Both the position numbers and the translations under genes were made by a program. Under the pieces are notes generated by a model. That model had not been told where the DNA came from. It saw nothing but the letters and a program-made list of their open reading frames with translations, and searched no databases. From positions 62,001-126,000 of the IMG/VR virus record IMGVR_UViG_3300046170_000519: DNA of 64,000 nt. The stretch is one strand, 5' to 3'. How positions within the stretch are numbered: position 1 is the stretch's first letter; the number at the start of each line of letters is the position of its first letter. Below, one piece after another: positions 13,749-64,000 of the stretch.

Positions 13749-13810
13749 TGAGATGACTATGATTACACAAAAAATTGATAAAATTAAATTCAAACTTAAT
13801 ATATAAGTAT

Positions 13811-14533
13811 ATGAAAACTGTAACAGCAATTATCCCTACATACAATAGATTTAAATACTTGCTCAACACTATAAAATCAATAAAAACTCAAACTTATTCA
13901 AATATTGAAATTATAGTTATCAACGATAGCTCAACACAAAAAGAATACTACCAATATGATTGGCACTCAAGCGGAGTAACGATAATACACTTGGGAGAAA
14001 ACAGTAGGAAAAAATTTGGCTATCCTTGCGGAGGTTTCGTTAGAAATCAAGGTAGTAAAATAGCCTCAGGAGAGTATATAGCTTTTTGTGATGATGATGA
14101 TATTTGGCTGCCCGAAAAAATAGAACTTCAGTTAAATGCAATGATTAAAGACAATACAAAAATGTCTTCCTCAGATGGATTAATTGGGTCAGGAGTTTTT
14201 GATGTTAGCAAAGATTATAAGTTATACAATGAAGAAAATTATAAAAGCACCCTGCAGAACATATACAAAAAAAGAGGTAGCGATAAATTAAACAATGGTT
14301 TTCCTGAAATTTGGGACTACGATTTTTTGAAGACTCATAACTGTATGATAACCAGCTCCGTCATTATAGAAAAAAAAGTTCTAGAGTCTATAAATTATAT
14401 GAATAACCTTAGGAACGGAAGGGAAGATTATGACTGCTGGTTAAGATGTTTAAAAGAAATTAATAAGAGTTCATACATTAAGACTCCTTGCTTTTATTAT
14501 GATAGGGGCCATGGAGATGGTAGAGAGTATTAA
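13811..14533 (+). CDS. GT2 glycosyltransferase
   Basis: IIPTYNR, QTYSNIEIIVINDSS, RN.G, IAFCDDDD, EDYDCW. Confidence 0.88.
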   Translation: MKTVTAIIPTYNRFKYLLNTIKSIKTQTYSNIEIIVINDSSTQKEYYQYDWHSSGVTIIHLGENSRKKFGYPCGGFVRNQGSKIASGEYIAFCDDDDIWLPEKIELQLNAMIKDNTKMSSSDGLIGSGVFDVSKDYKLYNEENYKSTLQNIYKKRGSDKLNNGFPEIWDYDFLKTHNCMITSSVIIEKKVLESINYMNNLRNGREDYDCWLRCLKEINKSSYIKTPCFYYDRGHGDGREY

Positions 14534-20630: not shown

Positions 20631-20706
<76 letters not shown>

Positions 20707-31041: not shown

Positions 31042-31044
31042 AAT

Positions 31045-31239: not shown

Positions 31240-31275
31240 TCTCTACTAAGTTTCGTTTAAATAATTTTATTTAAC

Positions 31276-31662: not shown

Positions 31663-31720
31663 TTTTATTTATTTTTTAATGTTTTTGTTAAAGGATATAA
31701 TTATATTAATTATATATAAA

Positions 31721-32886: not shown

Positions 32887-33133
32887 AAATGAGATTTTAA
32901 ATCATTGCAGAGGTTAGAGACTAGCTCTCCGCTAACTCTGAGTTTATGCTTATTTCTGATAACATGATAGAAATTTTCATTCTCGATTAAAATAATTAAA
33001 GAACATTGATTGAATAGTAAATCTCCATGCACTCGTTTAAATTCTTTTTCTAAGGAATTTATTATGAGATCTTGAGTCTGACCAAAACCAAAGCGGAAAT
33101 TATAATTTAGTACATTGTCTATAATAATCATGA
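32883..33133 (-). CDS. hypothetical protein
   Basis: probable start MIIIDNV. Confidence 0.45.
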
Positions 33134-33195
33134 CATATATATGTAATAAAAAGAGTAGCAAGCTGTTGCGAAAAATAAAAATTGTAAAATCTCCA

Positions 33196-33735: not shown

Positions 33736-33786
33736 AATACATTATAGTCCACTAGTTTTATTGCCGCTGAATATTTTTTTTCTTGG

Positions 33787-39586: not shown

Positions 39587-39661
39587 ATGATTCATCATGT
39601 TACAATTCAACAGTTAATAATATTACTAAGTATAAGTATAGCCTTAGCGTTTTTTTTATGA
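39587..39661 (+). CDS. possible 24-aa hydrophobic peptide MIHHVTIQQLIILLSISIALAFFL
   Basis: preceded by GTGTATAAATA; single TM-like segment; too short to be sure. Confidence 0.3.
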   Translation: MIHHVTIQQLIILLSISIALAFFL

Positions 39662-42121: not shown

Positions 42122-44694
42122 TATTTCAAATCTCCTAACTTCATAAATATTTTTTCTTTTAACAACATTAAAGAGTCTACAAAGACAATATCATTGTGTT
42201 TTGACCCAATGAATGAAACTATATCATCTTTCACTGGCAAAACTTTACCTTGATCTATGTATTCTGAATATTTATTACCTCTAGCATTATCCATAAACAT
42301 AGCTGAATATGATCCGTATTCATCTGAGATTATCATTTTAAAATATTTATTACCATTTCTACTTACACCTTTATAGAAATCTTTTATAACTCCTATAAAT
42401 TTTCCACGACATCTTTCTTCACTGTAAAAATTTAAAGAATTGTAAATGTTTTCTGTGTCTTGGAATACAGATTTTAAATCACAACTATAGCTATAGCCTA
42501 AAAGCTGTGTTTCAAAATACCAATTCGCAAACTTTTCGTACTTGCTGTTTTGTAGATAAATTTCTTTATACTTTGAATATTTAGCTTTAAAATTCTTGAA
42601 CCTCGAATCTTTCATGAAAAGTTTCCCGTCAGAACAAATTAAACCTTTTTCACTTTCCGCTATAATGTTCAATAATTTATTATCGTATTTATCAGCAAGC
42701 TCTACAACCATCTTCTTTTCTCTATCTGTTAGTAAATTAAAAGATTGAGCTTCAAGAACTAAGAGGGGGCGAGAACAAGAATAATTGGGTAGGCAACCAG
42801 CTTGAATTAAAGAAGAAAGTATTCCTATATTTAACCCTGCACTTTTAGCTGAAATAAAAATGTTAAATTTATTTGGGTCTAAATTATCTCTAAATTTACT
42901 CAGGGATTCTAAAGATTTTTCACTAACCCCTTTTATACTATTGAGCCCAAAGCGTAAATTGTCACCTTCTTTGCTGAAATCCATCTGCGACCTTTCTAGG
43001 TCTGGGGGGAGTAATTTTATATTAAAAAAGCTCAACTCTTGAGAAATTTTGTTAATTTCATCTTGCTGACAAGGCTCGAATTTACTCATTTTAAGTAAGC
43101 TTAAGAAAAAATCCTGAGGGAAATTAAATTTTAGGTAGACCGTCCAAGATGCAAGCATAGCATAGGCTATCGAATGGCTTTTGTTAAAAGAATAATTTGC
43201 ACTATCCTCAGCGACTTTCCACAAAATATCCGACACCTCAATTGGGTAATTGTTTTCCTCAATTTTTTGCTGTATTTTCTGTTTCCAAGCTGGCATAAGA
43301 TCAGTTTTTTTCTTGCCAACAATTCTCCTGAGCTGCTCAGCCTCATCTAGAGAAAAACCTACAGCAACAACCATTTTCATTAACTGCTCTTGATATAAGG
43401 GTATTCCTCCTGTGTAGGACAAAATCTCTTTAAAGAAGTCGTGAATGATATTAGAGCAACCAGTTTTTACAAAATCCGCATAGGAATCAGAGAATTCCAA
43501 TGCTCCTGGTCTGGCTAGAGCTATTGTAGCACTAACCTGCTCAAGGTTACCTGGCTTAATTGACTGACAAACTCTATAGTTGGTTTCAGCTTCAATTTGA
43601 AACAGCCCATGAGGAGATCTTATTTGATTTTTTAGGGGAGAATAGATTGATTCGTCAGATAAGTCGATAGAGTTTACATCTATAGATAAAGATTTGCAAA
43701 CACCATGGATTACACTCAAGGTTCTTAAACCTAGAATGTCAAATTTAACCATCAACTCCGACACCCAATTCATATCATAAGCTGTAATGACAGCGCCTTC
43801 ATTAGTTGATTGTAATGGACATATCTCAGATATTTTATAATAAGATATAGCTATTCCTGAGGGATGGACTCCTGTGTTCTTGTTTAAACCTTCTATTTTT
43901 TTAGCTATGCCTATGCATTTTTTATTAGACTTAGCCCAAGAACTAAATCTTTCGCTCTCTTTAAGTGACTGAGAAATAGAGTGAACTTTTCCGAATTTTT
44001 TTGGTATATAGTCGCTTAAAATGTTTACCTCTTTTTCTGATAAATCGTTTACAATTTTACCACATTCTTTAATGCAAAGTTTACTGCTAAGCCTGTTAAG
44101 AGTTAAGATTTTAGCAGTTCTGTTAGGGTTTTTTTTGTCTATATAAGATAAAACTTTCTGACGATGCTCATAAGCAATATCGTTGTCGATATCAGCCAGT
44201 AGACTTCCATCCAGAAAAACTTCTCCATTTAATTCTGTTTTTTTTGCTCTACTTTTAGAAACAAAACGCTCGAAGAATAAATCATATTTTACTGGGTCTA
44301 CATTAGTGACATTAATTAGAAATAAAACTAAAGAACCTGCAGCAGAGCCTCTCCCTGGCCCAACTGGGATATCATTTTCGTGACAAAAATTAATAATATC
44401 CCAATTTAACAAAATGTAATCAACAAAACCTAATTCTTCTAAAGTATCTAACTCATAACTTAATCTTGAGACATAATTGTCATAAGAATGTAATTCAGAA
44501 AAAAAAGATTGGTCTAGAGAATTTAACCTCTGTTCGCACAAAGCTTTTAAGAAAGAAAAATTACTAACTTTATCTGATAACCCAACCTTAGTATAATATT
44601 TTTTTGAAATTTTTATTTTAGGAAGCTTTACTCCAGGAGGAGTTGAACCAGCATAACTTGAAAACTTTTTTAAAAAATTATTTTTACAATTCAT
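42121..44694 (-). CDS. dnaE: DNA polymerase III alpha, catalytic part lacking the PHP domain
   Basis: GPGRGSAAGSL, LFFERF, ADIDND, HPSG, KFDILGL, G.FQ, YQEQ.M, YSFNKSH, RFGL..IKGV, C-terminal OB fold. Confidence 0.92.
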   Translation of the reverse strand: MNCKNNFLKKFSSYAGSTPPGVKLPKIKISKKYYTKVGLSDKVSNFSFLKALCEQRLNSLDQSFFSELHSYDNYVSRLSYELDTLEELGFVDYILLNWDIINFCHENDIPVGPGRGSAAGSLVLFLINVTNVDPVKYDLFFERFVSKSRAKKTELNGEVFLDGSLLADIDNDIAYEHRQKVLSYIDKKNPNRTAKILTLNRLSSKLCIKECGKIVNDLSEKEVNILSDYIPKKFGKVHSISQSLKESERFSSWAKSNKKCIGIAKKIEGLNKNTGVHPSGIAISYYKISEICPLQSTNEGAVITAYDMNWVSELMVKFDILGLRTLSVIHGVCKSLSIDVNSIDLSDESIYSPLKNQIRSPHGLFQIEAETNYRVCQSIKPGNLEQVSATIALARPGALEFSDSYADFVKTGCSNIIHDFFKEILSYTGGIPLYQEQLMKMVVAVGFSLDEAEQLRRIVGKKKTDLMPAWKQKIQQKIEENNYPIEVSDILWKVAEDSANYSFNKSHSIAYAMLASWTVYLKFNFPQDFFLSLLKMSKFEPCQQDEINKISQELSFFNIKLLPPDLERSQMDFSKEGDNLRFGLNSIKGVSEKSLESLSKFRDNLDPNKFNIFISAKSAGLNIGILSSLIQAGCLPNYSCSRPLLVLEAQSFNLLTDREKKMVVELADKYDNKLLNIIAESEKGLICSDGKLFMKDSRFKNFKAKYSKYKEIYLQNSKYEKFANWYFETQLLGYSYSCDLKSVFQDTENIYNSLNFYSEERCRGKFIGVIKDFYKGVSRNGNKYFKMIISDEYGSYSAMFMDNARGNKYSEYIDQGKVLPVKDDIVSFIGSKHNDIVFVDSLMLLKEKIFMKLGDLK

Positions 44695-45322: not shown

Positions 45323-46068
45323 GATTGAATTTCAGATAAATAACTTTCAAAAGAAAAATCACTACTCCCAAAACCTGATAGATTTGGATTAGATAGAGTA
45401 GATTGTCTTGAAAAGTTTCTATTACAAATGCACTTGTACGTTTGAAAAGCTTCTACATCAGATTTTTTATTATACAATATTGTTTTTGTTTTTAAAGTTT
45501 GCAAAGAATGGTTCGAGCAATACTGATTAACACTATCTTCTAGAAGATTGTCTATAGGAAGGTTATTATTCTCTATAAAAAAGATAGGCTTAGCAAAATC
45601 AAAATTTGGCATACAAGTAGAAAAGGAAAAATTATTTTTATACAAAAAAGAATCGTAGAAAGGTATGGCTAGAAGCAAATGTTTATCGCTCCAGTGTTGG
45701 GAGATAAGATCGTTAGTGCATACCCCTTGGTTATTACAATGTGTATCACTGTACAATAAATTTAATTTATTGCAACCTTCTTTACTCCTCGCAAAAACAA
45801 TAATTTTATGTTCGTCATCTTTAGAGTCTAGGGAGCACTGCATATTAAAGATCAAACCAAAAACAAAATTTATGCCCGAAAAATCTGAAACTTTTTGAGC
45901 TTGCAAAAAACCTGTTGGTGAATTTTCAACCAAAGTTAGATCATTAATTTTATTATTTATTAATAAATCAAAAATTGAATCAGCAGATTCCGAATCTGTT
46001 TCTCCAGGCTCATTTAAGGTTAGAATACTTTTTCCAATACTATAATGCGATTTAAATAAAGGTAGCAT
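45319..46068 (-). CDS. stand-alone PHP domain of DNA polymerase III alpha
   Basis: FKSHYSIGKSIL, GF......FG, FA....G...L..L.S; metal ligands appear degenerate. Confidence 0.78.
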   Translation of the reverse strand: MLPLFKSHYSIGKSILTLNEPGETDSESADSIFDLLINNKINDLTLVENSPTGFLQAQKVSDFSGINFVFGLIFNMQCSLDSKDDEHKIIVFARSKEGCNKLNLLYSDTHCNNQGVCTNDLISQHWSDKHLLLAIPFYDSFLYKNNFSFSTCMPNFDFAKPIFFIENNNLPIDNLLEDSVNQYCSNHSLQTLKTKTILYNKKSDVEAFQTYKCICNRNFSRQSTLSNPNLSGFGSSDFSFESYLSEIQS

Positions 46069-50519: not shown

Positions 50520-50933
50520 TTATATAAGTTTTACACCAAATTTAGCAAAAAGATTTGGAGTTATTTGATCATTTGGATATATTTCAACAAGAGTGATATC
50601 GTTAATGTTGCAAAAATCTAATTTTTGTTTATCTCTAGAGAGTTGAGAGATGTAATTAATTTTATTAAATCCGTGGAAAAAAGGGGTGTATTTTGTATGC
50701 TGTCCTCCTTGAACTTCAACAGCAACTTTCCTGTTTGAATTATAAAAATCAAAAGACATTTTGCTTCCTACGAGAGGAAACTCTTCAAAAACAACATGAT
50801 TAATCCAATATTTTTTTAAAAAATTTTTAACCGCAAATTGAAATTTACTCCTGCTAGGCGAATCCCAATCTATTAAATATTTTTTAATATTAGAAACTTT
50901 TTTTTCTCTCCCATGTAAAGATTTAAACTTCAT
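50520..50933 (-). CDS. Vsr/DUF559-like endonuclease
   Basis: EF.......DFY......AVEVQG.QH, RD..K..FC..N.I.L.EI. Confidence 0.78.
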   Translation of the reverse strand: MKFKSLHGREKKVSNIKKYLIDWDSPSRSKFQFAVKNFLKKYWINHVVFEEFPLVGSKMSFDFYNSNRKVAVEVQGGQHTKYTPFFHGFNKINYISQLSRDKQKLDFCNINDITLVEIYPNDQITPNLFAKFGVKLI

Positions 50934-54313: not shown

Positions 54314-55414
54314 TTACAAACTTAATATTTCTTCCTTTATCATATCAAATATATACTCCCTTAAGTTATCGTCAGATTCAAGTATATCAAGAAGTTTATT
54401 TTCTCCTTGAATTTTTTCTGGAAGCTCTAATTTTTTAAGCTCTAACTTCTTTCTGAGGTCTTCATCGATAGAGATCCAAGCCCCTTTCTGCTCCAGAAAA
54501 CCCCAGTTTTTCATTAAGTCTACCAGCTCTTTTTCGACCCATATAGAATTCCCATCTTTTCTTCCGTATCGAATTGGATATTTTACGCAAGCCCCTGTTT
54601 TTTCATTAACGCTTTTTCTAAAAATTATTTTACAATAATGACCAATTGGATCACCTTTATCTTCGAGTCTGGAAGCTGAAGGGTTGGTGTACATTATCTC
54701 AGTTGAGTATCTCTCTTGAAATTCTAATATAAAATTAGCATAATGTTTGATTGCATTCCCTCCAGCCTGTTTTACTTTCGGTCCACCTCTTGAAGCATAT
54801 GGATTAGTCGCGACTTCAACTCTAACTTGAGATGTTAAAATTAACATATGACCCATTTTAGTCAAAGGTAATATAACTTTTTTCAAGAAGACGGAAGTTA
54901 TAAGAGCTCCTCCAGCAACCTGCTCGCTATCTTCAAAAGCTTTTTCATAATCAATCAAGCGGCACAGAGCATCAACACTGTCAATAATAAATAAATATTT
55001 TTTATTTTCAGGATTATTGGATATTAATTCCCTTAACAACTCAAAAACTTTTTCGTACACATTACAATCAAATCTAAAAAATTTATCTGGACTTTGGTCA
55101 ACCCCGCATCGAGACAGTAATTCTTTGCTTAATCGACCTTCACTTTTAACATAAATCACCATTCCATCTTTTTTAAAATGATTTTGAAAATTTTTAGCAA
55201 CAGTTAGAGCGCAGCTAGTCTTTCCTCCTTCATTAACACCAGTAAAACGATGAGCTCCAGAGCAAAAACCTCCATTGAGGGCTAAATCTAAATGGAGACT
55301 GCCTGTTGGGATTTTATAATCTAATTCTTGATGGTTGTTATAGTGATACTTTGAATTAGATTTATCATTCAAAAAGTTTTCAATTAAAGATAAGGAGTGA
55401 TTAGTTGTTGTCAT
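54314..55414 (-). CDS. recA: RecA-family recombinase
   Basis: IPTGSLHLDLALNGG, G.NEGGKTS, IIDSV.AL, SQVR, GGNAIKHYA, GAW. Confidence 0.88.
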   Translation of the reverse strand: MTTTNHSLSLIENFLNDKSNSKYHYNNHQELDYKIPTGSLHLDLALNGGFCSGAHRFTGVNEGGKTSCALTVAKNFQNHFKKDGMVIYVKSEGRLSKELLSRCGVDQSPDKFFRFDCNVYEKVFELLRELISNNPENKKYLFIIDSVDALCRLIDYEKAFEDSEQVAGGALITSVFLKKVILPLTKMGHMLILTSQVRVEVATNPYASRGGPKVKQAGGNAIKHYANFILEFQERYSTEIMYTNPSASRLEDKGDPIGHYCKIIFRKSVNEKTGACVKYPIRYGRKDGNSIWVEKELVDLMKNWGFLEQKGAWISIDEDLRKKLELKKLELPEKIQGENKLLDILESDDNLREYIFDMIKEEILSL

Positions 55415-55802
55415 GATGATTTTTGCGATCTGAGAAAAAATTTCTAAAAGTTTTTTTGGATTTTACAGTATAATTAGAAACTTCAGTTATATCTCGTTTG
55501 AATTTTAATGGTTTATAAGGTTTTGGCTGCCAATGAAAACGTTTCCATTGTTTTTTAAGGAAGTATTTCCAATAGTAATTCTTTTTGTCAAAAAATAAAG
55601 CTAAAGATGGAATTCTTCCATTTTTACACTGGGCATTTTCCAGACTTAATGTTTGCCAGAAAGATTCACTAGGATAAAGTCCATATATCTTCTTAAATAA
55701 AACAGTCTCTTTTTTCCAGAAGGTTTTCGCCGAAAGAGACCTGCCATCTTTCGGGCAAATTAAAATACGAGAAATAACATCTTTATAATTAAAATTATTC
55801 AA
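55401..55802 (-). CDS. hypothetical basic protein
   Basis: 133-aa ORF coupled to recA. Confidence 0.55.
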   Translation of the reverse strand: MNNFNYKDVISRILICPKDGRSLSAKTFWKKETVLFKKIYGLYPSESFWQTLSLENAQCKNGRIPSLALFFDKKNYYWKYFLKKQWKRFHWQPKPYKPLKFKRDITEVSNYTVKSKKTFRNFFSDRKNHHDNN

Positions 55803-55851: not shown

Positions 55852-58800
55852 TTAGCTAGTTATCTCTTTGCAGTGGTAAGCGTTATTCGCTGAAGTTCCC
55901 TTCATATTAGTGTAATCCTCATGATTGCTGATGACCACTCTTTCTGATGGAGCTTCTAGGCAGGTAATTGTGTCCCTCCCTTCATTATTATAATCAATAG
56001 CCATAGATTGATTACCCATAGAGTGGACAACAGAACATTGACCATACCATTCTTTTATATTACCTGCACCCGACTCAGTCGTAAATCCCATCTGTAATTC
56101 GGCCTCTAATTTGTGTGTTACGAGGCAATTTTCTCCTGCTGTAAGAAGATCATCTATATATTGATCGATTGCAGCTTCACATTCTAGAGCAGAATGCAAT
56201 AATCCATGATTACCTTCGGTGAACATGCAAGCATTCTGGTTACCTTGGCTGCAAAGATATTCTGTATATGTTGTGGTATTAAAATTTGGATCGCTCTTAT
56301 GTTGAACTTTTGCTTTTTCTATATAAAACTGATCTAAAATAGTTGTAGCAATGTCAGCTATATGCCTAATTGTTGAAATTAATTGTTTAGGGCTAGCTTC
56401 TACAGTTTCACCTGCGACAGCATCAAAATATGAAAGCCCTTGGCAGCCCAAGCTAGAGTTAAATGGACATTCACCGCTCTCATTCAAAGAGTTTCCATAA
56501 GCCATTAAAGCTTCTAAAGTTGTTAAACCAGAGAGGTCTTCCTTGCGAAGAGAATTTAATGGGTTTGACTGTGTCATTATTAATGTCAAATTACATCCTT
56601 CCATTGTCATCTCATAGTTAACTGTTTGAATAAGACAGTTCCCACTTGTAGGGTTAAAATAATCAGCATTTCCATCATCACCCGTACATTTGAAAAGACC
56701 AAAACTACCTGAAGAGCTACCCGAAATAGGCATGTCGATAAATTGACTATTCATTCTTAAGAATTGATTGCCGACAAGAAAATCAATTTGAACTATTCCT
56801 TGCCCCCTGCAAGCATTGAAAGACATCACGGAAAGTAAAACCTTTAAACTTCCTTGAGCTCCCCACTGCACTGGTGGCTCAAAGCCATATTTTTTATTAT
56901 CGTCTTTATTATACATTGTAAGAGTCTGAGGGTCATTGCATTGACAACCTATTTTTGGACCGTTACAATCTTGAACTTGAGCACTATCCAATTCGTTGCA
57001 GAAAGCTTCAAGAGTATTACCTTCCTTAAGATATTCACACAAATCTCCATTGTCACCGACAATATCTTTTAAGTCTGTAGCTTGAGTAGTATATATGTAA
57101 TAAAAAGCCGATTTTTCATGATCTTTTTCTTTTTTATCATCATCACCTTCGCTCGGACAAGCTTCATCCACTGCACACCTGAAGCCCGTAACTCCGCACT
57201 CTGTTGTATTTCGTATGATTTCAGGCTCAACAGTCTGCTCATATGGATCTTCAGATGTATCTAGACAATTGTAAGTCATATTGCTAATATTATCAAGTTC
57301 AGAGATATTAGTTATCTCGCTTAACTCATCACACATCTCTTGTGAGCCATCTGCCATGTTGCCGTCTTCATCGACATCACAACACTCTTCCGTATCTTTT
57401 AAGCTCCAATTTAAAACCTCTACTTGAATTTTACCTTCCTGCGTTAACTCGTACTCACGATTTTTTGTGTTTAGTTTGATGATAGCTGTTTCCGTACAAT
57501 TACAATCCTCCCAAAGACACCCACCACAACAGTCAGAACCATCATTATCACCATTTGATGTATCTGTACCAGCAGGAGCTGTATCTGTGCCAACAGGAGA
57601 TGTATCTGTGCCAACAGGAGATGTATCTGTGCCATCACCTTCTCCACTAGTATCTGTGGATTCTCCAGCTGTATCTGTACTTTCTGCTGCTGTATCTGTA
57701 CTTTCGGGAGCTGTATCTGAGGGTTGTGGGCTTGTATTTGTTAATTGTGGGCTTGTGTTTGTTGATTTATAACTAGTATCTGTAGATTTAGATTTAGAGG
57801 TATCTGATGGATCAGGACTGTCTGTGGAATTCCCTACCGTTGGTGTTTCGGCGCCATGAGTTGGTGTTCCTTTAGGATCTGTTGGTGTTTCAGGATCTGT
57901 TGGTGTTTCAGGATCCGTTGGTGTTTCAGGATCAGTTGGTGTTTCGGGATCCGTTGGTGTTTCAGGATCCGTTGGTGTAAGCGGATCGGTTTGAGATTCC
58001 GTTGGTGTAAGCGGATCGGTTTGAGATTCCGTTGGTGTAAGCGGATCAGTTTGAGATTCCGTTGGTGTAGGCGGATCAGTTTGAGATTCCGTTGGTGTAG
58101 GCGGATCAGTTTGAGATTCCGTTGGTGTAGGCGGATCAGTTTCAGATTCTGTTGGTGTGGGAGGATCAGTTTCAGATTCTGTTGGTGTGGGAGGATCAGT
58201 TTGAGATTCCGTTGATGTGGGGGGATCCGTTTGAGTTTCCGTTGGTGTGGGAGGATCCGTTGGAGTATCTGTTTTGGTTTCAGATTCTGTATTTGTGTGA
58301 GTCTCTGTTTTTGTTTCAGATTCTGTATTTGTGTGAGTCTCTGTTTTTGTTGGAGTATCTGTTTTTGTTTCAGATTCTGTATTTGTCTTAGTTTCTGTAT
58401 TTGTCTTAGTTTCTGTTTTTGTTTCAGATTCTGTATTTGTGTGAGTCTCTGTTTCTGTTAGGGTATCTGTTTTTGTTTCAGATTCTGTATTTGTGTGAGT
58501 CTCTGTTTCTGTTAGGGTATCTGTTTTTGTTTCAGATGCTGTATTTGTGTGAGTTTTTGTCTCTGTACCAGTTTTAGTTTCTGTATAAGAGCCAGTTTCT
58601 GTTTCAGTTTGAGAAACTGTTGCTGTTTCTGTTTTAGTTTCAGTAGCTGTATCTGTTTCGGTTTTAGTTTTGCTTGGGCTTTTGGTATCTGTCGGAGTAG
58701 GGCAAGCACAAACCTTTCTCCAAGTAACATATTCTCCATCATCATGCAGATATTCTATTTGATCGCATGCTTTTTTGTATTCTTGACCGTAACTATCGGA

Positions 58801-61800
58801 GCCTATCGCATTATGAATTGTAAAATTAAAATCACCTCCACAAGTTTGATTTGCGCAATCAGCTAAATTAGCTTGTGAGTATTCATAGCATACATTATTT
58901 TCAGAAAGAATGTACTCATCTTCAGGCGTTGGTAAACTTTGTAATAAATGATAACCAGAATCTCTGGCTCCATCAATGCAACCTGATGTACAGGGTTTTA
59001 TATAGTAACATAAACATGACGGAGTCGGAGTATATGTTCCACTTGGACTCTGCGTTAAAGTCTCAGTTACAGTGGGGGTTCCTGTTTGAGTGAGGGAACC
59101 AGTTTCAGTAATAGAAGGGCTTTGAGTTATAGTTAATGACGGACTCTGTGTTTCGCTGGTTGTAGAACTAGCTGTTTCAGTCTGGGTCTGTGTAGGGGAT
59201 ATTGTATTACTTTCTGTTGGGGAAACTGGTGGGGTATCTGTTTCTGGACATTTGCATTCATCATCATTGCAGTTTGGGACTGCATTTTTTACCACTAAGA
59301 AATTAGGATTACTCTGGTCGCAAGGATTACAAGAATCATAGTATTCAGTAACTTCTTGAAGAATAACGCAGTTTCCATGGTTTGGCCCCAATGAATATAT
59401 ACCAGATCCACCAACATTAGCTGGTCTTGCTATAGAGTTATCAAAATTATCCCCACTACAATTGTTATAACATTCTTCAACTAGATAACATCTGCAACTT
59501 GGTGTTGGTGTTGGAGTTGGCTCTTCAATGCCTGTTTCTGAAACTGTTGGAGTTCTTTCACAACATTTATCGCAAGTAAGATCTCCAGGGTCACCGCCAC
59601 TTCCATAGTGAGCATTAACTGGAACCTGTGGTGCAATACTCCATTCACACGCAGGATCAGTTTCGTAATCTTTTAGATGCTCATTGCAATTTGCCCAGGC
59701 ATCAGAATTAAGCAAAGAATCGTCTATCTCATCTAAAGGATCTCCAGCGCAATATGTAAAAGTTTTATTAGGATCTGAGGCATGAATGTAAGTCGTGCAT
59801 TCCCAAAGTGGGCTTAAAGCCATAGTTAACAAACATAAACCATTTGCAGTTTTTGCACAAACAGCACTATTATAATCGGTAAAAAATAAACTTTCTGCAT
59901 CTGAAGGGTCCGTTCCGTATATTTTGTAAAAACCATTACTGCCTTCATTAGAGCAGTAACAACTCTCATTTGGAATTTCATAAGTGGATTCGTTTTCAAA
60001 AATGCTAGCCTCAGAAGAGAAACTGAAATCGCCAAAAAAACCAGATATTACAGGAGCCTGACAGTCACATGATTGAGCAGTAAATTTCGACCAAAAAGAA
60101 GAATCTTCTCCACAACTCCATTCTTTTTGACATTCGGTACATTGTTTGCAATCTCCAGAAGTACACCCATCTGCTTGAGAGTAAAAAGAATTAAATGACT
60201 CTAGATCAAATTGATCAGGAGGGCATTCGATAGCCACAGGGATTTCTCCAGGAGGGCATGTAACAGTTGCTGATGGGCTTGGGACGGTTGGACTATCTGT
60301 AGGCTCTTGGCATACATCGCAATCTAGTTCGTCAGAGATTTTTTGCCCAAAGAACGGAGAAAATCTATATTGACATGGATAATCTTGCTCTGGTAATACT
60401 TTAGCAGTAAAGCAGGTATTGCCCACTTGAGGGTTTTCGCCTCCAGTAGTCCCAGATAAAGTGTTATGAGATATTAAAGCTCGACTTGAGATTCGAAAAG
60501 TTCCTTCTTCGCTAGAACTACCAGAACTGTTAAATACACCATACCAACTTGCATCTCCGCAAGCCTGTAAGCTGACACATTTATAGGTAGTAGAGGTAGG
60601 AGATTGAGTGAAGCTAGGAGAAGGACTTTGAGTTAAACTTCCCGACTCTGTAAGAGTGAAAGAACCTGTTTCCGTTAAAGTCAGTGTTGGAGTAAAACGT
60701 GTTCCAGAGACAGTGATAGTTTCTGTTGGAAAAGGTGTCCAAGTTGGACAAAGAGAGTCGCAAGCTTCTTCAGAGGTAGGAAGGGTATAATCATGAAAGC
60801 AACCTGTAGTACCGTTGACATTCCATATAGCTTGAGCTTCTTCACATGTTAATACGTTAACTTCCGCGATTTGCCAACACTGATCGTAATTAATATTACC
60901 TGTGGCAATCCCTTTAGTATAATAAAGATCTCCAACATTTAACCCTACCGCATCTTGCGCTGCATCGCAATAATTACCTGTGACAGTCCCTTGTTGGGAA
61001 GTATAGCCAGATTGATCTCCATAATAAACTATTTTCCCTTGTATAGCATCTACTGGAGCATCATCTTTGGTTGTGCAATACTGATGATATTTAACCTCAA
61101 GAACTGGCTTAGAAGTACAAGTTCCAGTAATACTTGGTGTAGGCGAAGGCGGATGGGGACAAGAATTGCTATCACAACCATCAGGAACGATATAACAACC
61201 ATCAAAATTAAATACCAAATTGGATTCATTAATTTCGCAAGCTGCCATATCAACAATTTTGACATCTCTACATTGACCATCCGAGCAAATAATTGTATTG
61301 CCGTCAAAAGCAAGAGCAGCGTTAGGATCACAAGATTTAGCAAATACTTTTCTGTCTGGCATAGATGCTTCAACAGAATGATCGCACAACGTCCTTTCCA
61401 TACAAAAACATGTTTCAGTGAATGTTGGAGTTATAGAAGTTTGTGTTGGGGTAAAACGTGTACCTGTGTCAGTTAATGTGTATGTAGGAGTTTGAGTTCT
61501 GGAACAATTAGAGTCATTACAATCAGAAATTTCTTGACCAAAAGTATTATTTGTATGGGAATTATTATTAGCTGCAATGAAATTACTATTAAAGCCGAGA
61601 TAATTTATTGGATAAACAGTATTTTGACAATTTAAACTATTTAATGTATAACACAAACTAGCTCCACTAATATGTTGGAAGAAAAATGTTTTTCCTAAGC
61701 CTGTTAGGAGATTTTGATAAACGAATAAGTCAGCATTTCCATCGCTAGGACAGACTTTGTAAACACCATTTGAATTAACAAAGTTTCCAGTTTGAGAATC

Positions 61801-63999
61801 AAATTCATCAGCCTTTTCTGAATTACAGGGATCTTTTGAGAAACAAAAGCAAGAAGGACTTGGCGAAGGCGTTGGAGAGACCGTAAGTGATGTTGTAGAG
61901 GTTTCAGAAAAAGTCTCTGAAGTTGTGATAGTCGAAGTGTTTGTTAAGGACCCTGTTTCAGTTATTGACGGCGAAAATGTTGGAGTTAATCCTGTAACAG
62001 TGAAAGTCGGAGTAGCAGAGCAAAGATTGCTGTCACAATTAGATATTTTTTTTCCGAAACTATTGTTATGACCTGCATGTCCTGCAGCAATCCAAGGTCC
62101 AGAATCAACATAACGATCTGTATCAGGTGAGCAAATTGAATCAAGCAAAGTATAGCAAAAATGATATCCGTCGTTATGATAATAAATGAAGGTATCTCCA
62201 ATAGAGGAAACTAAGTCACTGTAAACACTTTGAGAGAAAGAATCTTCAGAAGGGCAAATTTTAAATGTTTCATTTAAATTAATTGAACCACCAGAACCAT
62301 TATGAGCCCTAATTAAGGAATCTGCGTCACACACTTCTTTCTTAAAACAATGGCAAGAGGGTGTATTTGTGGGCGTTATTGTATGAGTCTCAGTTTGAGT
62401 TTTTGTACCCGTGGGTGCAGTTTTTGTATTTGTCGGAAATGGAGTGGGGGTTGTGCAATTACCGTCCCCTTTACATTCTGGACAACAACATGGGCATCCA
62501 GGACTTCTTCCACAATAATATGGCCCGCTTGCATTGAACGTAGGGTCTGAATGATAACATAAAGAACCGCATAAACCGTTACTAATTGGAGCTCCATATT
62601 CATTTAAACAAGTTTCGGTATATGTAGAAGTTGGGGTTGGAGTGTGATTTGTGAAAGTAAAAGAAGGGCTAGGTGTTTCACTGGGGCTTGGTGTCTCAGT
62701 GGGAGTTGCAGGACAATTTTGAATTTCAATTCCTTGACAGTCATCTGGAGAATTACGACACAAAAAGCAAGCGTCTCCCGTTTGCTTATCTAAATTATTA
62801 GGATCATTAAGCCTAAATCCCAAAAGCTGAATTTGAATATCAGATAAATTTTGGTTAGTAACGAACGCTAATAATAATTGATCATACGTACAAGGCTCGA
62901 AAACACCACCAGAGTACGAAGAGCAAAACATATCTTTTAAGTCAGCTAGAGAAGTTGAAGGGTTATTGACTGTAATTTGACCCGCAAGAGTTGATTGGCT
63001 ATAACTTAAAACAATTTGCTTGTAAATATTATGAGGTATAATATCTGCTAAATCATATTCGCTGTACGTGGAACCATTACAAGAACCACCTTTTTCTATT
63101 GATTTAACACAATCTCCGTCAAAACAATGCACTTCTTCGTCAAAGTTTGGAGCACAGCTATCATCTAGCCATAAAGGACCAAAAAGCCTAAAAGAGTGTT
63201 GAGCTCCACTAACCATTGTTATGGTGTGACACGTTGTGCAGTTTTGTTCTATTTCGTACGATAAATTTTGCTCCGATAAACAATCACCTTCTAAATCTGG
63301 AGGAAAAGGTATGTCGGGAACTACCGTTGGATCTTCTGGTAGTGGTGGAGCATCAGCTGGAGGTAAATCTTCTGATTTAGAATATGGTCCGACAAGAAAG
63401 GCGCATCCTGGAGACTCATCAGAAAATTGACCTTTATAGCTTCCATCTGTATAATCGCTAGAATTTGCTCCTTCTGGAAGTTTATAGTAAGTATCATACT
63501 CAAAACCATATATTTCAGGTCTTTCAATAGATCCATCACAGGCAGTAGCATCCCCACAAGAATCTAGTAAATAATAGTCAGCGTCTGTTAGTGTGTGAGT
63601 GGGGGTTGGCGTTTCAGTAGAAATAGCAGAGCCAGTTTCTGTTGGTGAAAATTTTGTATTAGTTGTTGTTGGAGTCGGATTTTCACAACTACAAGGTAAA
63701 TAACTAAAAAATAAATTTGAGGGAATATTTAATGTTGTAGTGGGGTTTCCAGCAGAACAGCATACATATGAAATACTAACACAAAGATCTCCACTCTTGT
63801 AAGTGCCTTCTGTTAAATTATTGGAATTAAAATAAATTCCTTCGTAGGCTTTATGCGATTGATCGCTAGAGCTACATACAGTATAGTATACACAGCTAGA
63901 ACATGCCGTGCATTGTTGTGAAGTTGAATTAATTCCAAATGTATTATTTTGACAAATATCAAAAGGCTTTTCACAAGGTGGGCACGTTACTGTTTCTGT
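55852..63999 (-). CDS. giant Cys-rich, Thr/Pro-rich mucin-like protein (5'-truncated by the window edge, >2,700 aa)
   Basis: the frame of ORF 55852-63216 stays open from 63217 to the window end and encodes the same Cys-module/TPT-linker pattern. Confidence 0.85.
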   Translation of the reverse strand, partial: TETVTCPPCEKPFDICQNNTFGINSTSQQCTACSSCVYYTVCSSSDQSHKAYEGIYFNSNNLTEGTYKSGDLCVSISYVCCSAGNPTTTLNIPSNLFFSYLPCSCENPTPTTTNTKFSPTETGSAISTETPTPTHTLTDADYYLLDSCGDATACDGSIERPEIYGFEYDTYYKLPEGANSSDYTDGSYKGQFSDESPGCAFLVGPYSKSEDLPPADAPPLPEDPTVVPDIPFPPDLEGDCLSEQNLSYEIEQNCTTCHTITMVSGAQHSFRLFGPLWLDDSCAPNFDEEVHCFDGDCVKSIEKGGSCNGSTYSEYDLADIIPHNIYKQIVLSYSQSTLAGQITVNNPSTSLADLKDMFCSSYSGGVFEPCTYDQLLLAFVTNQNLSDIQIQLLGFRLNDPNNLDKQTGDACFLCRNSPDDCQGIEIQNCPATPTETPSPSETPSPSFTFTNHTPTPTSTYTETCLNEYGAPISNGLCGSLCYHSDPTFNASGPYYCGRSPGCPCCCPECKGDGNCTTPTPFPTNTKTAPTGTKTQTETHTITPTNTPSCHCFKKEVCDADSLIRAHNGSGGSINLNETFKICPSEDSFSQSVYSDLVSSIGDTFIYYHNDGYHFCYTLLDSICSPDTDRYVDSGPWIAAGHAGHNNSFGKKISNCDSNLCSATPTFTVTGLTPTFSPSITETGSLTNTSTITTSETFSETSTTSLTVSPTPSPSPSCFCFSKDPCNSEKADEFDSQTGNFVNSNGVYKVCPSDGNADLFVYQNLLTGLGKTFFFQHISGASLCYTLNSLNCQNTVYPINYLGFNSNFIAANNNSHTNNTFGQEISDCNDSNCSRTQTPTYTLTDTGTRFTPTQTSITPTFTETCFCMERTLCDHSVEASMPDRKVFAKSCDPNAALAFDGNTIICSDGQCRDVKIVDMAACEINESNLVFNFDGCYIVPDGCDSNSCPHPPSPTPSITGTCTSKPVLEVKYHQYCTTKDDAPVDAIQGKIVYYGDQSGYTSQQGTVTGNYCDAAQDAVGLNVGDLYYTKGIATGNINYDQCWQIAEVNVLTCEEAQAIWNVNGTTGCFHDYTLPTSEEACDSLCPTWTPFPTETITVSGTRFTPTLTLTETGSFTLTESGSLTQSPSPSFTQSPTSTTYKCVSLQACGDASWYGVFNSSGSSSEEGTFRISSRALISHNTLSGTTGGENPQVGNTCFTAKVLPEQDYPCQYRFSPFFGQKISDELDCDVCQEPTDSPTVPSPSATVTCPPGEIPVAIECPPDQFDLESFNSFYSQADGCTSGDCKQCTECQKEWSCGEDSSFWSKFTAQSCDCQAPVISGFFGDFSFSSEASIFENESTYEIPNESCYCSNEGSNGFYKIYGTDPSDAESLFFTDYNSAVCAKTANGLCLLTMALSPLWECTTYIHASDPNKTFTYCAGDPLDEIDDSLLNSDAWANCNEHLKDYETDPACEWSIAPQVPVNAHYGSGGDPGDLTCDKCCERTPTVSETGIEEPTPTPTPSCRCYLVEECYNNCSGDNFDNSIARPANVGGSGIYSLGPNHGNCVILQEVTEYYDSCNPCDQSNPNFLVVKNAVPNCNDDECKCPETDTPPVSPTESNTISPTQTQTETASSTTSETQSPSLTITQSPSITETGSLTQTGTPTVTETLTQSPSGTYTPTPSCLCYYIKPCTSGCIDGARDSGYHLLQSLPTPEDEYILSENNVCYEYSQANLADCANQTCGGDFNFTIHNAIGSDSYGQEYKKACDQIEYLHDDGEYVTWRKVCACPTPTDTKSPSKTKTETDTATETKTETATVSQTETETGSYTETKTGTETKTHTNTASETKTDTLTETETHTNTESETKTDTLTETETHTNTESETKTETKTNTETKTNTESETKTDTPTKTETHTNTESETKTETHTNTESETKTDTPTDPPTPTETQTDPPTSTESQTDPPTPTESETDPPTPTESETDPPTPTESQTDPPTPTESQTDPPTPTESQTDPLTPTESQTDPLTPTESQTDPLTPTDPETPTDPETPTDPETPTDPETPTDPETPTDPKGTPTHGAETPTVGNSTDSPDPSDTSKSKSTDTSYKSTNTSPQLTNTSPQPSDTAPESTDTAAESTDTAGESTDTSGEGDGTDTSPVGTDTSPVGTDTAPAGTDTSNGDNDGSDCCGGCLWEDCNCTETAIIKLNTKNREYELTQEGKIQVEVLNWSLKDTEECCDVDEDGNMADGSQEMCDELSEITNISELDNISNMTYNCLDTSEDPYEQTVEPEIIRNTTECGVTGFRCAVDEACPSEGDDDKKEKDHEKSAFYYIYTTQATDLKDIVGDNGDLCEYLKEGNTLEAFCNELDSAQVQDCNGPKIGCQCNDPQTLTMYNKDDNKKYGFEPPVQWGAQGSLKVLLSVMSFNACRGQGIVQIDFLVGNQFLRMNSQFIDMPISGSSSGSFGLFKCTGDDGNADYFNPTSGNCLIQTVNYEMTMEGCNLTLIMTQSNPLNSLRKEDLSGLTTLEALMAYGNSLNESGECPFNSSLGCQGLSYFDAVAGETVEASPKQLISTIRHIADIATTILDQFYIEKAKVQHKSDPNFNTTTYTEYLCSQGNQNACMFTEGNHGLLHSALECEAAIDQYIDDLLTAGENCLVTHKLEAELQMGFTTESGAGNIKEWYGQCSVVHSMGNQSMAIDYNNEGRDTITCLEAPSERVVISNHEDYTNMKGTSANNAYHCKEITS
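57875..57978. repeat. 18-bp coding tandem repeat (ETPTDP), 5 full copies plus a partial
   Basis: GGATCHGTTGGTGTTTCR units. Confidence 0.9.
57983..58261. repeat. 30-bp coding tandem repeat (TDPPTPTESQ), about 9 copies
   Basis: GGATCRGTTTGAGATTCCGTTGGTGTRRGC-like units. Confidence 0.92.
58262..58560. repeat. nested T-x-T-x coding repeats including a 54-bp unit (TKTDTLTETETHTNTESE)
   Basis: 58421-58474 repeats at 58475-58528; shorter variants flank it. Confidence 0.85.
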
Positions 64000-64000
64000 A

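What the first reader, a model, noticed from the sequence alone, without database searches (positions are those of the whole stretch)
55852..63999. Giant modular protein: repeated Cys-rich module alternating with Thr/Pro linkers
Seen: the ORF is longer than the track shows and is open to the window end. Modules repeatedly begin just after a TPT linker with a CxC-aromatic/hydrophobic-x4-C pattern (SCHCFKKEVC, SCFCFSKDPC, TCFCMERTLC, SCRCYLVEEC, SCLCYYIKPC) and end with C-x2-4-C. Two adjacent ~120-aa modules (about 61500-62360) are clear duplicates. A ~350-aa T-x-T-x/TPTDP stalk precedes an acidic Cys-rich C-terminal domain. The layout recalls eukaryotic mucins or protist surface antigens and is odd for a protein made in a reducing bacterial cytoplasm.
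Basis: partly seen in the sequence, partly recalled or inferred. Interest (0 to 1): 0.72.

Follow-up and report, generated by a model that had tools for sequence, protein, structure and literature searches.

The report
Giant cysteine/threonine-rich jumbo-phage protein
A marine jumbo phage encodes a real, intact 2,980-residue protein made of small cysteine-paired modules strung on threonine/proline linkers; it has no relatives in any database, evolves unusually fast, and the phage carries only two tRNA genes, for cysteine and threonine, so it is most likely a long extracellular fibre or adhesin on the virus particle.

Summary
The ORF lies on the minus strand at window 55852-64000 and runs 794 nt past the window end, giving 2,980 aa. 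It has no signal peptide and no membrane segment.

- **Origin:** a 205,857-bp IMG/VR phage record found in seawater metagenomes. It encodes a DnaE-type polymerase, a DnaB-like helicase, UvsX and TerL.
- **Architecture:** 13 Cys clusters separated by Thr/Pro/Ser linkers, then a 388-aa Thr-rich stalk and an acidic 560-aa C-terminal domain with 30 Cys.
- **Cys parity:** 12 of 13 clusters hold an even number of Cys, and CxxC is not enriched. This favours disulfides over metal sites.
- **Module motif:** C-x-C-[YFWM]-x4-C occurs exactly five times, always at a linker-to-module boundary (0 of 5,000 shuffles reach five).
- **Module homology:** only M4 and M5 are clear duplicates (E 2e-22). M6 and M10 match a profile built from modules of the syntenic giant genes of two related phages.
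- **Database searches:** nothing in Pfam, NCBIfam, PDB, GenBank phages or 1.8 billion protein representatives.
- **Evolution:** neighbouring genes are 38-83% identical between relatives, but this gene is unrecognisable. Strain variants show excess non-synonymous change.
- **tRNAs:** the phage's only two are tRNA-Cys and tRNA-Thr.

Best reading, inferred and not shown: a virion-borne, disulfide-stabilised, possibly glycosylated fibre or adhesin.

The parts
55852..64000 (-). Giant ORF as far as it lies in the window. The full gene runs to an ATG at window-equivalent 64794 (G000 117852-126794; L003:1852-10794) and encodes 2,980 aa (P0002).
   Evidence: The stretch is identical in independent runs X1 and X11. 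Strain X15 shows 99 substitutions and no indels.
55855..57534 (-). C-terminal domain, residues 2421-2980: 30 Cys, acidic, and an orphan with no relatives found.
   Evidence: A phmmer search of 1.84 billion representatives returned only a 99%-identical 124-aa fragment. There was no hit in IMG/VR or GenBank phages. The AF2 model has pLDDT 33 and is unusable. Against strain L036 the last 200 codons show 7 non-synonymous and 0 synonymous changes.
57535..58698 (-). Thr-rich stalk, residues 2033-2420: T-x-T-x repeats, then TDPPTPTES and TDPETP repeats. It contains no Cys.
   Evidence: tandem DNA repeats of 18, 30 and 54 nt; 34% Thr, 83 TxT.
58702..59016 (-). Module M11, residues 1927-2031: 10 Cys, starts SCLCYYIKPC.
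   Evidence: (z 2.2 against the relatives' module profile).
59248..59496 (-). Module M10, residues 1767-1849: 10 Cys, starts SCRCYLVEEC. It is the best match to the module family of the related phages.
   Evidence: 21.0 bits, z 7.2, 0 of 200 shuffles reach it. The AF2 model is all-beta with pLDDT 76. No fold match was found.
59560..60258 (-). Module M9, residues 1513-1745: 20 Cys, unique sequence.
60310..60579 (-). Module M8, residues 1406-1495: 6 Cys.
60748..61119 (-). Module M7, residues 1226-1349: 8 Cys.
61159..61410 (-). Module M6, residues 1129-1212: 10 Cys, starts TCFCMERTLC.
   Evidence: (17.9 bits, z 6.1, 1 of 200 shuffles reaches it).
61504..61851 (-). Module M5, residues 982-1097: 8 Cys. 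Duplicate of M4.
62020..62355 (-). Module M4, residues 814-925: 8 Cys. Duplicate of M5.
62455..62610 (-). Module M3, residues 729-780: 10 Cys in 52 aa (CPCCCPEC).
62713..63558 (-). Module M2, residues 413-694: 16 Cys. It is the largest internal globular segment.
63685..63984 (-). Module M1, residues 271-370: 12 Cys. The N-terminal TETPPR linker and module M0 (residues 1-108, 15 Cys, weak CNYD-like repeat) lie beyond the window end.
20631..20706 (-). tRNA-Thr(UGU), one of only two tRNA genes in the phage. The other, tRNA-Cys(GCA), is at G000 45838-45912, outside the window.
   Evidence: The same pair is present in relative G001, and tRNA-Thr in G002.
13775..14533 (+). GT2-family glycosyltransferase. 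A second, weaker GT2 match lies at window 5541-5882 on the minus strand. Either could glycosylate the Thr-rich linkers; this is inference only.
54314..55802 (-). Downstream neighbours orf133 and uvsX. They anchor the synteny with related phages L010, L011 and L012.

Best explanation
The gene encodes a ~330-kDa beads-on-a-string protein of an uncultured marine jumbo phage.

**What is shown**
- Thirteen small, independently folding modules carry paired cysteines.
- Extended Thr/Pro/Ser linkers separate them. A 388-residue Thr-rich stalk then leads to a large acidic, Cys-rich C-terminal domain.

**What I infer**
- The protein works outside the cell as a long fibre or adhesin carried on the virion, either as a tail or head fibre or as a surface coat.
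- It is made in the host cytoplasm without a signal peptide and leaves at lysis.
- Its cysteines pair into intramodule disulfides that stiffen the beads in oxic seawater.
- The linkers act as extended spacers. They may be O-glycosylated by the phage's own GT2 transferases and sugar-nucleotide enzymes.
- If the ~900 linker residues are fully extended, the reach would be a few hundred nanometres.
- The fast-evolving C-terminal end contacts the host or another surface.
- The phage supplies its own tRNA-Cys and tRNA-Thr to meet the codon demand of this protein and its sister giant proteins.

Virion location, disulfide formation, glycosylation and binding are all inferred, not shown.
For: **The gene is real**
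- A 2,980-codon open frame stands in a 34% G+C genome.
- The stretch is identical in independent seawater assemblies. A 1.9%-diverged strain shows 99 substitutions and no indels, and a second strain exists as L036.
- Contigs of an RNA library cover most of the stretch, which is weak support for transcription.

**Cysteines are paired within modules**
- 12 of 13 Cys clusters hold an even number of Cys (chance of at least 12 of 13 is about 0.002).
- All 12 clusters as scored in the L010 and L011 orthologues are even. So are 15 of 19 in the 4,048-aa paralogue.
- The first and last Cys of each module sit at the linker boundaries.
- Six Cys columns are invariant across 16 family modules.
- CxxC is not enriched: 14 observed against 11.5 expected.

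**Extracellular logic**
- The sister giant protein and the L012 orthologue carry a 27-aa CNYD repeat. The other proteins found to carry it are giant ones, three of the four showing a signal-peptide-like N-terminus and one a T9SS sorting domain.
- The paralogue also starts with a LysM domain.

**Pattern typical of a host-interaction gene**
- Fourteen neighbouring genes are 38-83% identical to those of relatives and in the same order. The giant gene gives no BLAST or phmmer hit to its positional orthologues.
- In strain comparisons the C-terminal domain shows 7 non-synonymous and 0 synonymous changes, against about 30 and 61 in nine neighbours (Fisher p 7e-4).
- Of 36 changed codons seen against strain X15, 24 are non-synonymous and 12 synonymous.

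**Translation support**
- The only two tRNAs in the 206-kb genome are tRNA-Cys and tRNA-Thr.
- The same pair is conserved in a relative.

**Glycosylation potential**
- The phage has two GT2 matches, three NAD-dependent sugar epimerase/dehydratases and a UDP-glucose dehydrogenase.
Against: - There is no direct evidence of virion association.
- The gene sits between replication genes (uvsX, helicase, primase, polymerase) and nucleotide-metabolism genes (dUTPase, RNR small subunit). It is about 100 kb from TerL, not in a recognisable structural block.
- No known fibre, Ig-like, lectin or receptor-binding domain is detected.
- The phage encodes no Erv1-type sulfhydryl oxidase. How about 80 disulfides would form correctly is unexplained.
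- Even Cys counts also fit 4-Cys metal sites.
- The module model is only moderately confident: pLDDT 76 for the best model and 46-70 for the other four. I could not read its Cys-Cys distances.
- The glycosyltransferases could equally serve DNA or host-envelope modification.
- The RNA-library contigs may derive from contaminating DNA.
Confidence: 0.5

Rival explanations
1. The protein is extracellular but not part of the virion. It would be released at lysis as a free adhesive, matrix or decoy protein. For example, it could bind cell debris, particles or competing phages, or coat neighbouring cells.
For: - It has no signal peptide, and its gene lies outside any recognisable structural module.
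- It is extremely acidic, with a net charge of about -288.
- The CNYD-repeat relatives of its paralogue are secreted bacterial surface proteins.
Against: - A 9-kb gene plus dedicated tRNAs is a large investment for a protein that is not targeted anywhere.
- The contrast between a hypervariable gene and conserved neighbours is what is usually seen in receptor-binding virion proteins.
- There is no precedent I can cite.
Confidence: 0.17
2. The protein is an intracellular metal-binding or redox protein. Its Cys clusters would coordinate Zn, Fe or Cu, or buffer thiols, in the infected cell, in the manner of metallothioneins or zinc-ribbon arrays.
For: - It is made in a reducing cytoplasm without an export signal.
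- Even Cys counts are compatible with Cys4 sites.
- The phage encodes a thioredoxin and no sulfhydryl oxidase.
Against: - CxxC and CC spacings are not enriched.
- Cys density in the modules is about 8%, far below metallothioneins, and His is only 1.7%.
- Modules contain 6 and 10 Cys, counts that are not multiples of four.
- About 900 residues of Thr/Pro linker and a 388-aa stalk have no role in such a function.
- There are no Zn-finger Pfam hits.
Confidence: 0.07
3. The protein is an internal head or ejected protein. It would be packaged with the DNA and injected into the host, like the giant ejection proteins or virion RNA polymerases of other large phages.
For: - Giant ORFs in large phages are often packaged cargo. 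This rests on general knowledge and was not tested here.
- The gene is not in an obvious tail-fibre block.
Against: - Disulfide-stapled modules and long Thr/Pro spacers are poorly suited to threading through a tail.
- No polymerase, enzymatic or membrane-insertion features are present.
- Excess non-synonymous change at the C-terminus points to an exposed surface.
Confidence: 0.05
4. It is not a functional gene. The frame would be open by chance or by assembly artefact across repetitive DNA.
For: - The stalk and the N-terminal linker are tandem DNA repeats.
- The contigs of relatives L010 and L011 end inside their giant genes.
Against: - The 8.9-kb frame is open in an AT-rich genome.
- The sequence is identical in independent assemblies. 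The X15 strain differs by 99 substitutions, and neither it nor the L036 strain has any indel.
- The non-repetitive modules make up two thirds of the length.
- Orthologues lie at the same locus in three relatives.
- Cys parity and boundary motifs would not arise in non-coding DNA.
Confidence: 0.01

Closest known systems
Syntenic giant ORFs of related uncultured marine phages (IMGVR_UViG_3300046742_000152 = L010; IMGVR_UViG_3300020185_004854 = L011; IMGVR_UViG_3300000101_000035 = L012)
   Same: - They occupy the same position, directly upstream of orf133 and uvsX.
- L010 and L011 show the same architecture: PTPTPT linkers and modules of about 70-95 aa. These start C-x-C-[YW]-x4-C, or just C-[YV]-x4-C, and end C-x2-4-C, with even Cys counts.
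- A profile of their modules recognises M6 and M10.
   Different: - No pairwise sequence similarity is detectable.
- C-terminal domains are not demonstrably homologous: hhalign probability 0.8% and HMM score within the shuffle range.
- L012 has mostly different, Cys-poorer modules and a different 900-aa C-terminus.
4,048-aa paralogous giant protein of the same phage (G000 130263-142409)
   Same: - Cys 6.8% and Thr 17.9%, with Thr-rich linkers between Cys clusters that are mostly even in count.
- It lies on the same strand, 3.5 kb upstream.
   Different: - It carries an N-terminal LysM domain, significant CNYD repeats, its own repeated 100-aa and 42-aa modules, and a protease-like C-terminus (phrog_20754).
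- No module is shared with P0002 by phmmer.
Unnamed 27-aa 'CNYD' repeat (consensus GCTDPSACNYNPNATIDDGSCEY) of giant bacterial surface proteins (P0017-P0020)
   Same: - It is a short Cys-containing extracellular repeat. Residues 81-107 of P0002 align over its full length.
- It is clearly present in the paralogue and in the L012 orthologue.
   Different: - In P0002 the match is weak: 6.2 bits, reached by 4 of 1,000 shuffles.
- The bacterial proteins carry 36-50 copies. Three of the four show signal-peptide-like N-termini and one a T9SS sorting domain, which the phage protein lacks.
- The repeat is not in Pfam or NCBIfam.
Gel-forming mucins and mucin-like glycoproteins of eukaryotes
   Same: - Pro/Thr/Ser-rich tandem-repeat stretches alternate with Cys-rich globular domains, in a protein of giant size.
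- The phage has glycosyltransferases and sugar-nucleotide enzymes.
   Different: - No VWD, CysD, TIL or cystine-knot domains are found.
- There is no signal peptide or secretory pathway.
- The protein is phage-encoded.
- Glycosylation is untested.
Glycosylated surface fibrils of giant viruses such as Mimivirus (from general knowledge, not tested here)
   Same: - A virus would make a long surface-fibre layer and carry its own sugar-nucleotide and glycosyltransferase genes.
- Virion proteins are made in the cytoplasm.
   Different: - The host domain differs (bacteria rather than amoebae).
- There is no sequence or fold relation.
- Neither virion location nor glycosylation is shown here.
- No viral sulfhydryl oxidase is found.

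Membership tests
Eukaryotic mucins / mucin-like surface antigens | Pro/Thr/Ser-rich tandem-repeat domains | tested here: met
   Linkers are at least 50% T+P+S. The 388-aa stalk is 34% Thr and is built from 18/30/54-nt tandem repeats.
Eukaryotic mucins / mucin-like surface antigens | VWD/VWC/CysD/cystine-knot or other recognised Cys-rich domains | tested here: not met
   No Pfam family at E<=0.01 over the whole protein. No PDB sequence match.
Eukaryotic mucins / mucin-like surface antigens | Signal peptide and secretory-pathway synthesis | tested here: not met
   The N-terminus MLPIQDDLLEFSIDWHGH is not hydrophobic, and no 19-residue window reaches Kyte-Doolittle 1.6. The gene lies in a phage genome.
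Eukaryotic mucins / mucin-like surface antigens | Dense O-glycosylation of the PTS domains | not testable with these tools
   Only the potential is seen: two GT2 matches, three epimerase/dehydratases and a UDP-glucose dehydrogenase.
Phage tail fibres / receptor-binding proteins | Recognised fibre, spike or receptor-binding domain family | tested here: not met
   The only PHROG hit is a linker-only match to an unknown-function family. No Pfam or NCBIfam hit. tblastn against 50,697 phage records found nothing.
Phage tail fibres / receptor-binding proteins | Hypervariable locus, with excess non-synonymous change at the distal end, among conserved neighbours | tested here: met
   Neighbours are 38-83% identical to relatives while the giant gene is undetectable. 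C-terminal domain 7N:0S against neighbours about 30N:61S, p 7e-4.
Phage tail fibres / receptor-binding proteins | Gene located in the structural/tail module | tested here: not met
   The gene is flanked by uvsX and helicase on one side and dUTPase and RNR small subunit on the other. TerL is about 100 kb away. Most structural genes of this phage are unrecognisable, so module borders are uncertain.
Phage tail fibres / receptor-binding proteins | Presence in the virion | not testable with these tools
   There is no isolate and no proteome.
CNYD-repeat surface proteins (unnamed 27-aa repeat) | Significant match to the repeat profile built from P0017-P0020 | tested here: inconclusive
   P0002 residues 81-107 align end to end but score only 6.2 bits, reached by 4 of 1,000 shuffles. 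The paralogue scores E 4.7e-11, and the two L012 ORFs E 4.3e-10 and 1.9e-4.
Zinc-ribbon / metallothionein-type metal-binding arrays | Enriched CxxC or CxC/CC spacings and high Cys density | tested here: not met
   CxxC 14 observed against 11.5 expected, CC depleted (7 against 14.2), Cys about 8% of module residues, His 1.7%.
Diversity-generating retroelement targets | Reverse transcriptase in the genome | tested here: not met
   No RVT_1 match in the 205,857-bp record.
Module family 'C-x-C-[YFWM]-x4-C ... C-x2-4-C' (defined here) | Framing motifs at both linker boundaries, six invariant Cys columns, even Cys count | tested here: met
   M4, M5, M6, M10 and M11 all meet these features. M6 and M10 score z 6-7 against a profile built only from L010 and L011 modules. 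M4, M5 and M11 score only z 1.6-2.2.

The most novel reading that the evidence does not exclude
This would be a bacteriophage counterpart of the glycosylated fibril coat of giant viruses. A clade of marine jumbo phages would build mucin-like, disulfide-bonded, O-glycosylated fibres hundreds of nanometres long. The building blocks would be a previously undescribed Cys-rich module family, glycosylated by phage-encoded enzymes and translated with dedicated phage tRNA-Cys and tRNA-Thr. The fibres would diversify rapidly as the main determinant of what the particle sticks to.
Probability: 0.2. Interest if true: 0.85.

Novelty: new variant of a known kind. Interest (0 to 1): 0.62.

Why it matters
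- **A testable lead for an uncharacterised phage group.** Marine jumbo phages with DnaE-type polymerases are described as abundant but functionally uncharacterised (PMC9123017). This one spends roughly a fifth of its genome on Cys- and Thr-rich giant genes and keeps tRNAs only for those two residues. That gives a concrete, testable idea of what part of the extra genome is for.
- **A new domain family.** If the modules are disulfide-bonded, they form a new extracellular domain family. The case would also ask how a bacterial virus makes about 80 disulfides without an export pathway or a known oxidase.
- **A possible host-range marker.** The hypervariable gene among conserved neighbours is a candidate host-range or adhesion determinant for a widespread uncultured phage lineage.
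- **An annotation heuristic.** Phage tRNA repertoires may flag compositionally extreme structural genes.

Tried and rejected
1. **C-terminal domain homology with L010 and L011.** A MAFFT alignment looked collinear in its Cys positions. However, hhalign gave probability 0.8% and E 0.067. An HMM built from L010+L011 scored the real domain no better than shuffles. Homology is not shown.
2. **Fold of the C-terminal domain.** The AF2 model has pLDDT 33 and was not searched.
3. **Fold of module M10.** Searches in PDB by Foldseek and by VIA-align wide, in AFDB clusters, in BFVD and in the ESM Atlas gave nothing convincing. Best results were Z 2.5, Foldseek E at least 0.4, and Atlas TM about 0.5 to unnamed phage proteins.
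4. **Homologue searches.**
   - The whole-protein word search returned only linker hits covering 1-7% of the query.
   - The module-alignment search found nothing.
   - IMG/VR scans with M2, M9, the C-terminal domain, A3 and A2 returned nothing new.
   - ESM Atlas feature searches gave nothing usable.
5. **Shared late-promoter motif.** GTGTAAA lies upstream of the giant gene and of two Thr-rich genes. The strict pattern occurs 7 times against 3.5 expected, so it is not robust. No sigma-70-like promoter or terminator beyond chance flanks the gene.
6. **DGR-driven variation.** No reverse transcriptase is present.
7. **Viral sulfhydryl oxidase.** No Erv1/ALR match; the phage has only a thioredoxin.
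8. **Alternative genetic code.** It is not needed. Table 11 gives 94% coding density, and other codes give about the same (94-95%, reached by reading through real stops).
9. **Literature.** Searches for the motif and for comparable phage proteins found nothing relevant.
Full report
**Where the window comes from**

The window is bases 62001-126000 of a 205,857-bp IMG/VR virus record. The neighbourhood is phage-like:
- a DnaB-like helicase, an HNH endonuclease and a UvsX-like recombinase;
- a primase, an exonuclease, an ATP-dependent protease and a polymerase whose nearest GenBank matches are DnaE-type Pol III alpha at 25-33% identity;
- dUTPase and both RNR subunits;
- a large terminase at G000 16875-18731.

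Table 11 gives 94% coding density, so no alternative code is needed. At least 17 seawater or marine-plankton DNA runs hold 80-100% of the sampled words of the adjacent 8 kb. DnaE-bearing marine jumbo phages are described as a large, mostly uncharacterised cluster (PMC9123017).

**The observation**

The minus-strand ORF ends at window 55852 and is open at the window end. In the parent record it continues to an ATG at window-equivalent 64794, for 2,980 residues (P0002).

Composition is 14.5% Thr, 9.9% Ser, 8.2% Pro and 5.5% Cys (163 Cys). The rest of the proteome has 1.6% Cys and 4.3-4.6% Thr.

Splitting at Cys-free, T/P/S-rich gaps gives 13 Cys clusters:
- M0 to M11;
- then a 388-aa Cys-free stalk (residues 2033-2420, 34% Thr), built from 18/30/54-nt tandem repeats;
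- then a 560-aa acidic C-terminal domain with 30 Cys.

C-x-C-[YFWM]-x4-C occurs exactly five times, each time right after a linker. Shuffles give 0.03-0.11 on average and never reach five in 5,000 trials. The two 'clear duplicates' are M4 and M5, 34% identical with E 2e-22.

The other clusters are not detectably related to each other. The protein is therefore modular, but it is not an array of one module.

**Is the gene real?**

- Independent runs X1 and X11 carry window 58700-64000 without a single difference.
- Run X15 carries a strain with 99 substitutions and no indel over 5.3 kb.
- Contigs of an RNA library cover most of the stretch, although DNA carry-over cannot be excluded.
- A metagenome contig (L036) carries another strain.
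- A 124-aa fragment that is 99% identical exists in the 15-billion-protein collection.

An artefact or a chance frame is excluded for practical purposes.

**Disulfides or metals?**

- Twelve of the 13 clusters have an even number of Cys. The chance of at least 12 of 13 is 14/8192.
- All 12 clusters as scored in the orthologues of two related phages are even. So are 15 of 19 in the paralogous 4,048-aa protein.
- Each module begins and ends with a Cys at the linker boundary.
- CxxC is not enriched (14 against 11.5 expected) and CC is depleted. His is 1.7%.

This pattern is what small disulfide-stapled extracellular domains show. It is weak for zinc knuckles, although even counts alone do not exclude Cys4 sites.

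There is no signal peptide and no membrane segment, and the net charge is about -288. The phage has a thioredoxin but no Erv1-type oxidase.

**Relatives**

The protein has no hit in:
- Pfam, NCBIfam or PDB sequences;
- 50,697 GenBank phage records;
- PHROGs, where the only hit is a linker-only match to an unknown-function family;
- a word-based search of 5.8 billion proteins, which found only linker matches;
- an exhaustive phmmer search of 1.84 billion representatives with the C-terminal domain, which found only the near-identical fragment.

Related phages do exist. A UvsX search in IMG/VR gave 17 loci. In the three closest (UvsX 77-83% identical), a Cys- and Thr-rich giant ORF sits at the same place, directly upstream of orf133 and uvsX.

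L010 and L011 show PTPTPT linkers and modules of about 70-95 aa. These begin C-x-C-[YW]-x4-C, or just C-[YV]-x4-C, and end C-x2-4-C. A profile built only from their modules scores as follows against composition-matched shuffles:

| Module | Bits | z | Shuffles reaching the score |
|---|---|---|---|
| M10 | 21.0 | 7.2 | 0 of 200 |
| M6 | 17.9 | 6.1 | 1 of 200 |
| M11 | 7.8 | 2.2 | 5 of 200 |
| M4 | 6.9 | 1.6 | 12 of 200 |
| M5 | 8.3 | 1.7 | 15 of 200 |

A joint alignment of 16 modules keeps six invariant Cys columns. I therefore accept a loose module family with five members in this protein.

The C-terminal domains are not demonstrably homologous.

**Rate of change**

Fourteen downstream genes are 38-83% identical to their L010 and L011 counterparts and collinear. 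The giant gene gives no BLAST or phmmer hit to its positional orthologues.

Between close strains, the last 200 codons of the C-terminal domain carry 7 non-synonymous and 0 synonymous changes. Nine neighbouring genes together carry about 30 and 61 (Fisher p 7e-4). Of the 36 changed codons listed for strain X15, 24 are non-synonymous.

No reverse transcriptase is present, so this is not a DGR.

**Genomic company**

The phage holds several other compositionally extreme genes.
- A 4,048-aa protein combines:
  - LysM;
  - Cys-rich repeats and Thr linkers;
  - a protease-like C-terminus.
- About 20 kb of (TETQTQ)n-type repeat lies at G000 144-165 kb.
- Three further ORFs are 25-38% Thr.

The 4,048-aa protein and the L012 orthologue carry a 27-aa repeat, GCTDPSACNYNPNATIDDGSCEY. 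The other proteins found to carry it are giant ones. Three of the four show signal-peptide-like N-termini and one has a T9SS sorting domain. In P0002 only residues 81-107 resemble it, and only weakly.

ARAGORN finds exactly two tRNAs in the genome, tRNA-Cys(GCA) and tRNA-Thr(UGU). The same pair is found in relative G001. The phage also has two GT2 matches, three sugar epimerase/dehydratases and a UDP-glucose dehydrogenase.

**Structure**

An AF2 model of M10, made with the 16-module alignment, is all-beta. Its best-model pLDDT is 76, while the other four models score 46-70. It has no convincing match in any of the five libraries searched.

The C-terminal domain model is unusable at pLDDT 33.

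**Interpretation**

Shown:
- a real, intact, giant beads-on-a-string protein with paired cysteines and mucin-like linkers;
- it is specific to a small clade of marine jumbo phages;
- it evolves far faster than its neighbours;
- the phage's only tRNAs match its two enriched residues.

Inferred: it acts outside the cell as a virion-borne fibre or adhesin whose modules are disulfide-bonded and whose linkers may be glycosylated. The variable C-terminal domain would be the contact surface.

Against this reading:
- the gene is not in a recognisable structural block;
- no fibre domain is found;
- virion location is untested;
- the route to correct disulfide formation is unknown.

The rivals are a lysis-released free adhesin or decoy, an intracellular metal or redox protein, and packaged cargo. 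They are listed with their tests in the rivals section.

**Novelty**

Giant modular fibre or adhesin proteins are a known kind. New here are:
- the module family;
- the combination with Thr/Pro linkers in a phage;
- the orphan C-terminal domain;
- the matched tRNA pair.

I rate it a new variant of a known kind, with interest 0.62.

Noticed in passing
window 20631-20706 (-) and G000 45838-45912 (-), outside the window: The 206-kb phage has exactly two tRNA genes, tRNA-Thr(UGU) and tRNA-Cys(GCA). These are the two residues enriched in its giant proteins. Relative G001 has the same pair, and G002 has tRNA-Thr.
   Followed up: yes
G000 144082-164792 (window-equivalent 82082-102792, outside the window): About 20 kb of (TETQTQ/TETETQ)n repeat is open in several frames on both strands. 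The Thr frame switches between ORFs of 1,300-2,800 codons, and antisense frames read as Cys/Ser-rich pseudo-ORFs. It may be one or several hyper-Thr genes, or frameshifted by assembly.
   Followed up: partly
G000 130263-142409 (-) = L004:263-12409: A 4,048-aa paralogous giant protein starts with LysM. It then has CNYD repeats, (TDTAH)n and similar linkers, four or five copies each of a ~100-aa and a 42-aa Cys-rich module, and a protease-like C-terminus with a GDSGS motif (phrog_20754).
   Followed up: partly
P0017-P0020 (giant proteins from metagenomes and assembled sequencing runs; L035): A 27-aa Cys-containing repeat (consensus GCTDPSACNYNPNATIDDGSCEY) is present in 36-50 copies in 3,300-4,400-aa proteins. 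Three of the four show signal-peptide-like N-termini and one has a T9SS sorting domain. The repeat has no Pfam or NCBIfam model.
   Followed up: partly
window 13775-14533 (+), window 5541-5882 (-); G000 172907-181040: The phage has two GT2 glycosyltransferase matches, three NAD-dependent sugar epimerase/dehydratases and a UDP-glucose dehydrogenase. The sugar-nucleotide genes lie next to the Thr-rich genes.
   Followed up: partly
window 39656-42121 (-) and 42121-44694 (-): An 821-aa ATP-dependent protease (phrog_4871, E 5e-212) lies directly beside the polymerase. The polymerase's nearest GenBank phage matches are only 25-33% identical, and UvsX's nearest are about 26%. This is a very divergent phage lineage.
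   Followed up: no
G000 27760-34215 (outside the window): Several intergenic regions share a long conserved element (…ACTTACGAAAGCATTTTTATT…TTTTTTCTTGCG…). Many upstream regions at G000 23-63 kb carry canonical TTGACA/TATAAT-like promoters. This hints at an early region read by a sigma-70-type host polymerase.
   Followed up: no
L034 (G002:C1:46464-49515): ARAGORN calls a tmRNA-like gene with tag peptide ATEEYDSLVQFEQAEELEMVA in the related phage contig. The Rfam tRNA score there is below threshold.
   Followed up: no
window 50520-50933 (-): An HNH homing-endonuclease ORF lies between the helicase and orf576. It is conserved at 60-63% identity in L010 and L011, so it is not a recent insertion.
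   Followed up: no
G000 195713-205852 (-), at the record's end: A further 3,379-aa ORF has 0% Cys and normal Thr content and runs to within 5 bases of the record's end. It was not scanned against any family library.
   Followed up: no
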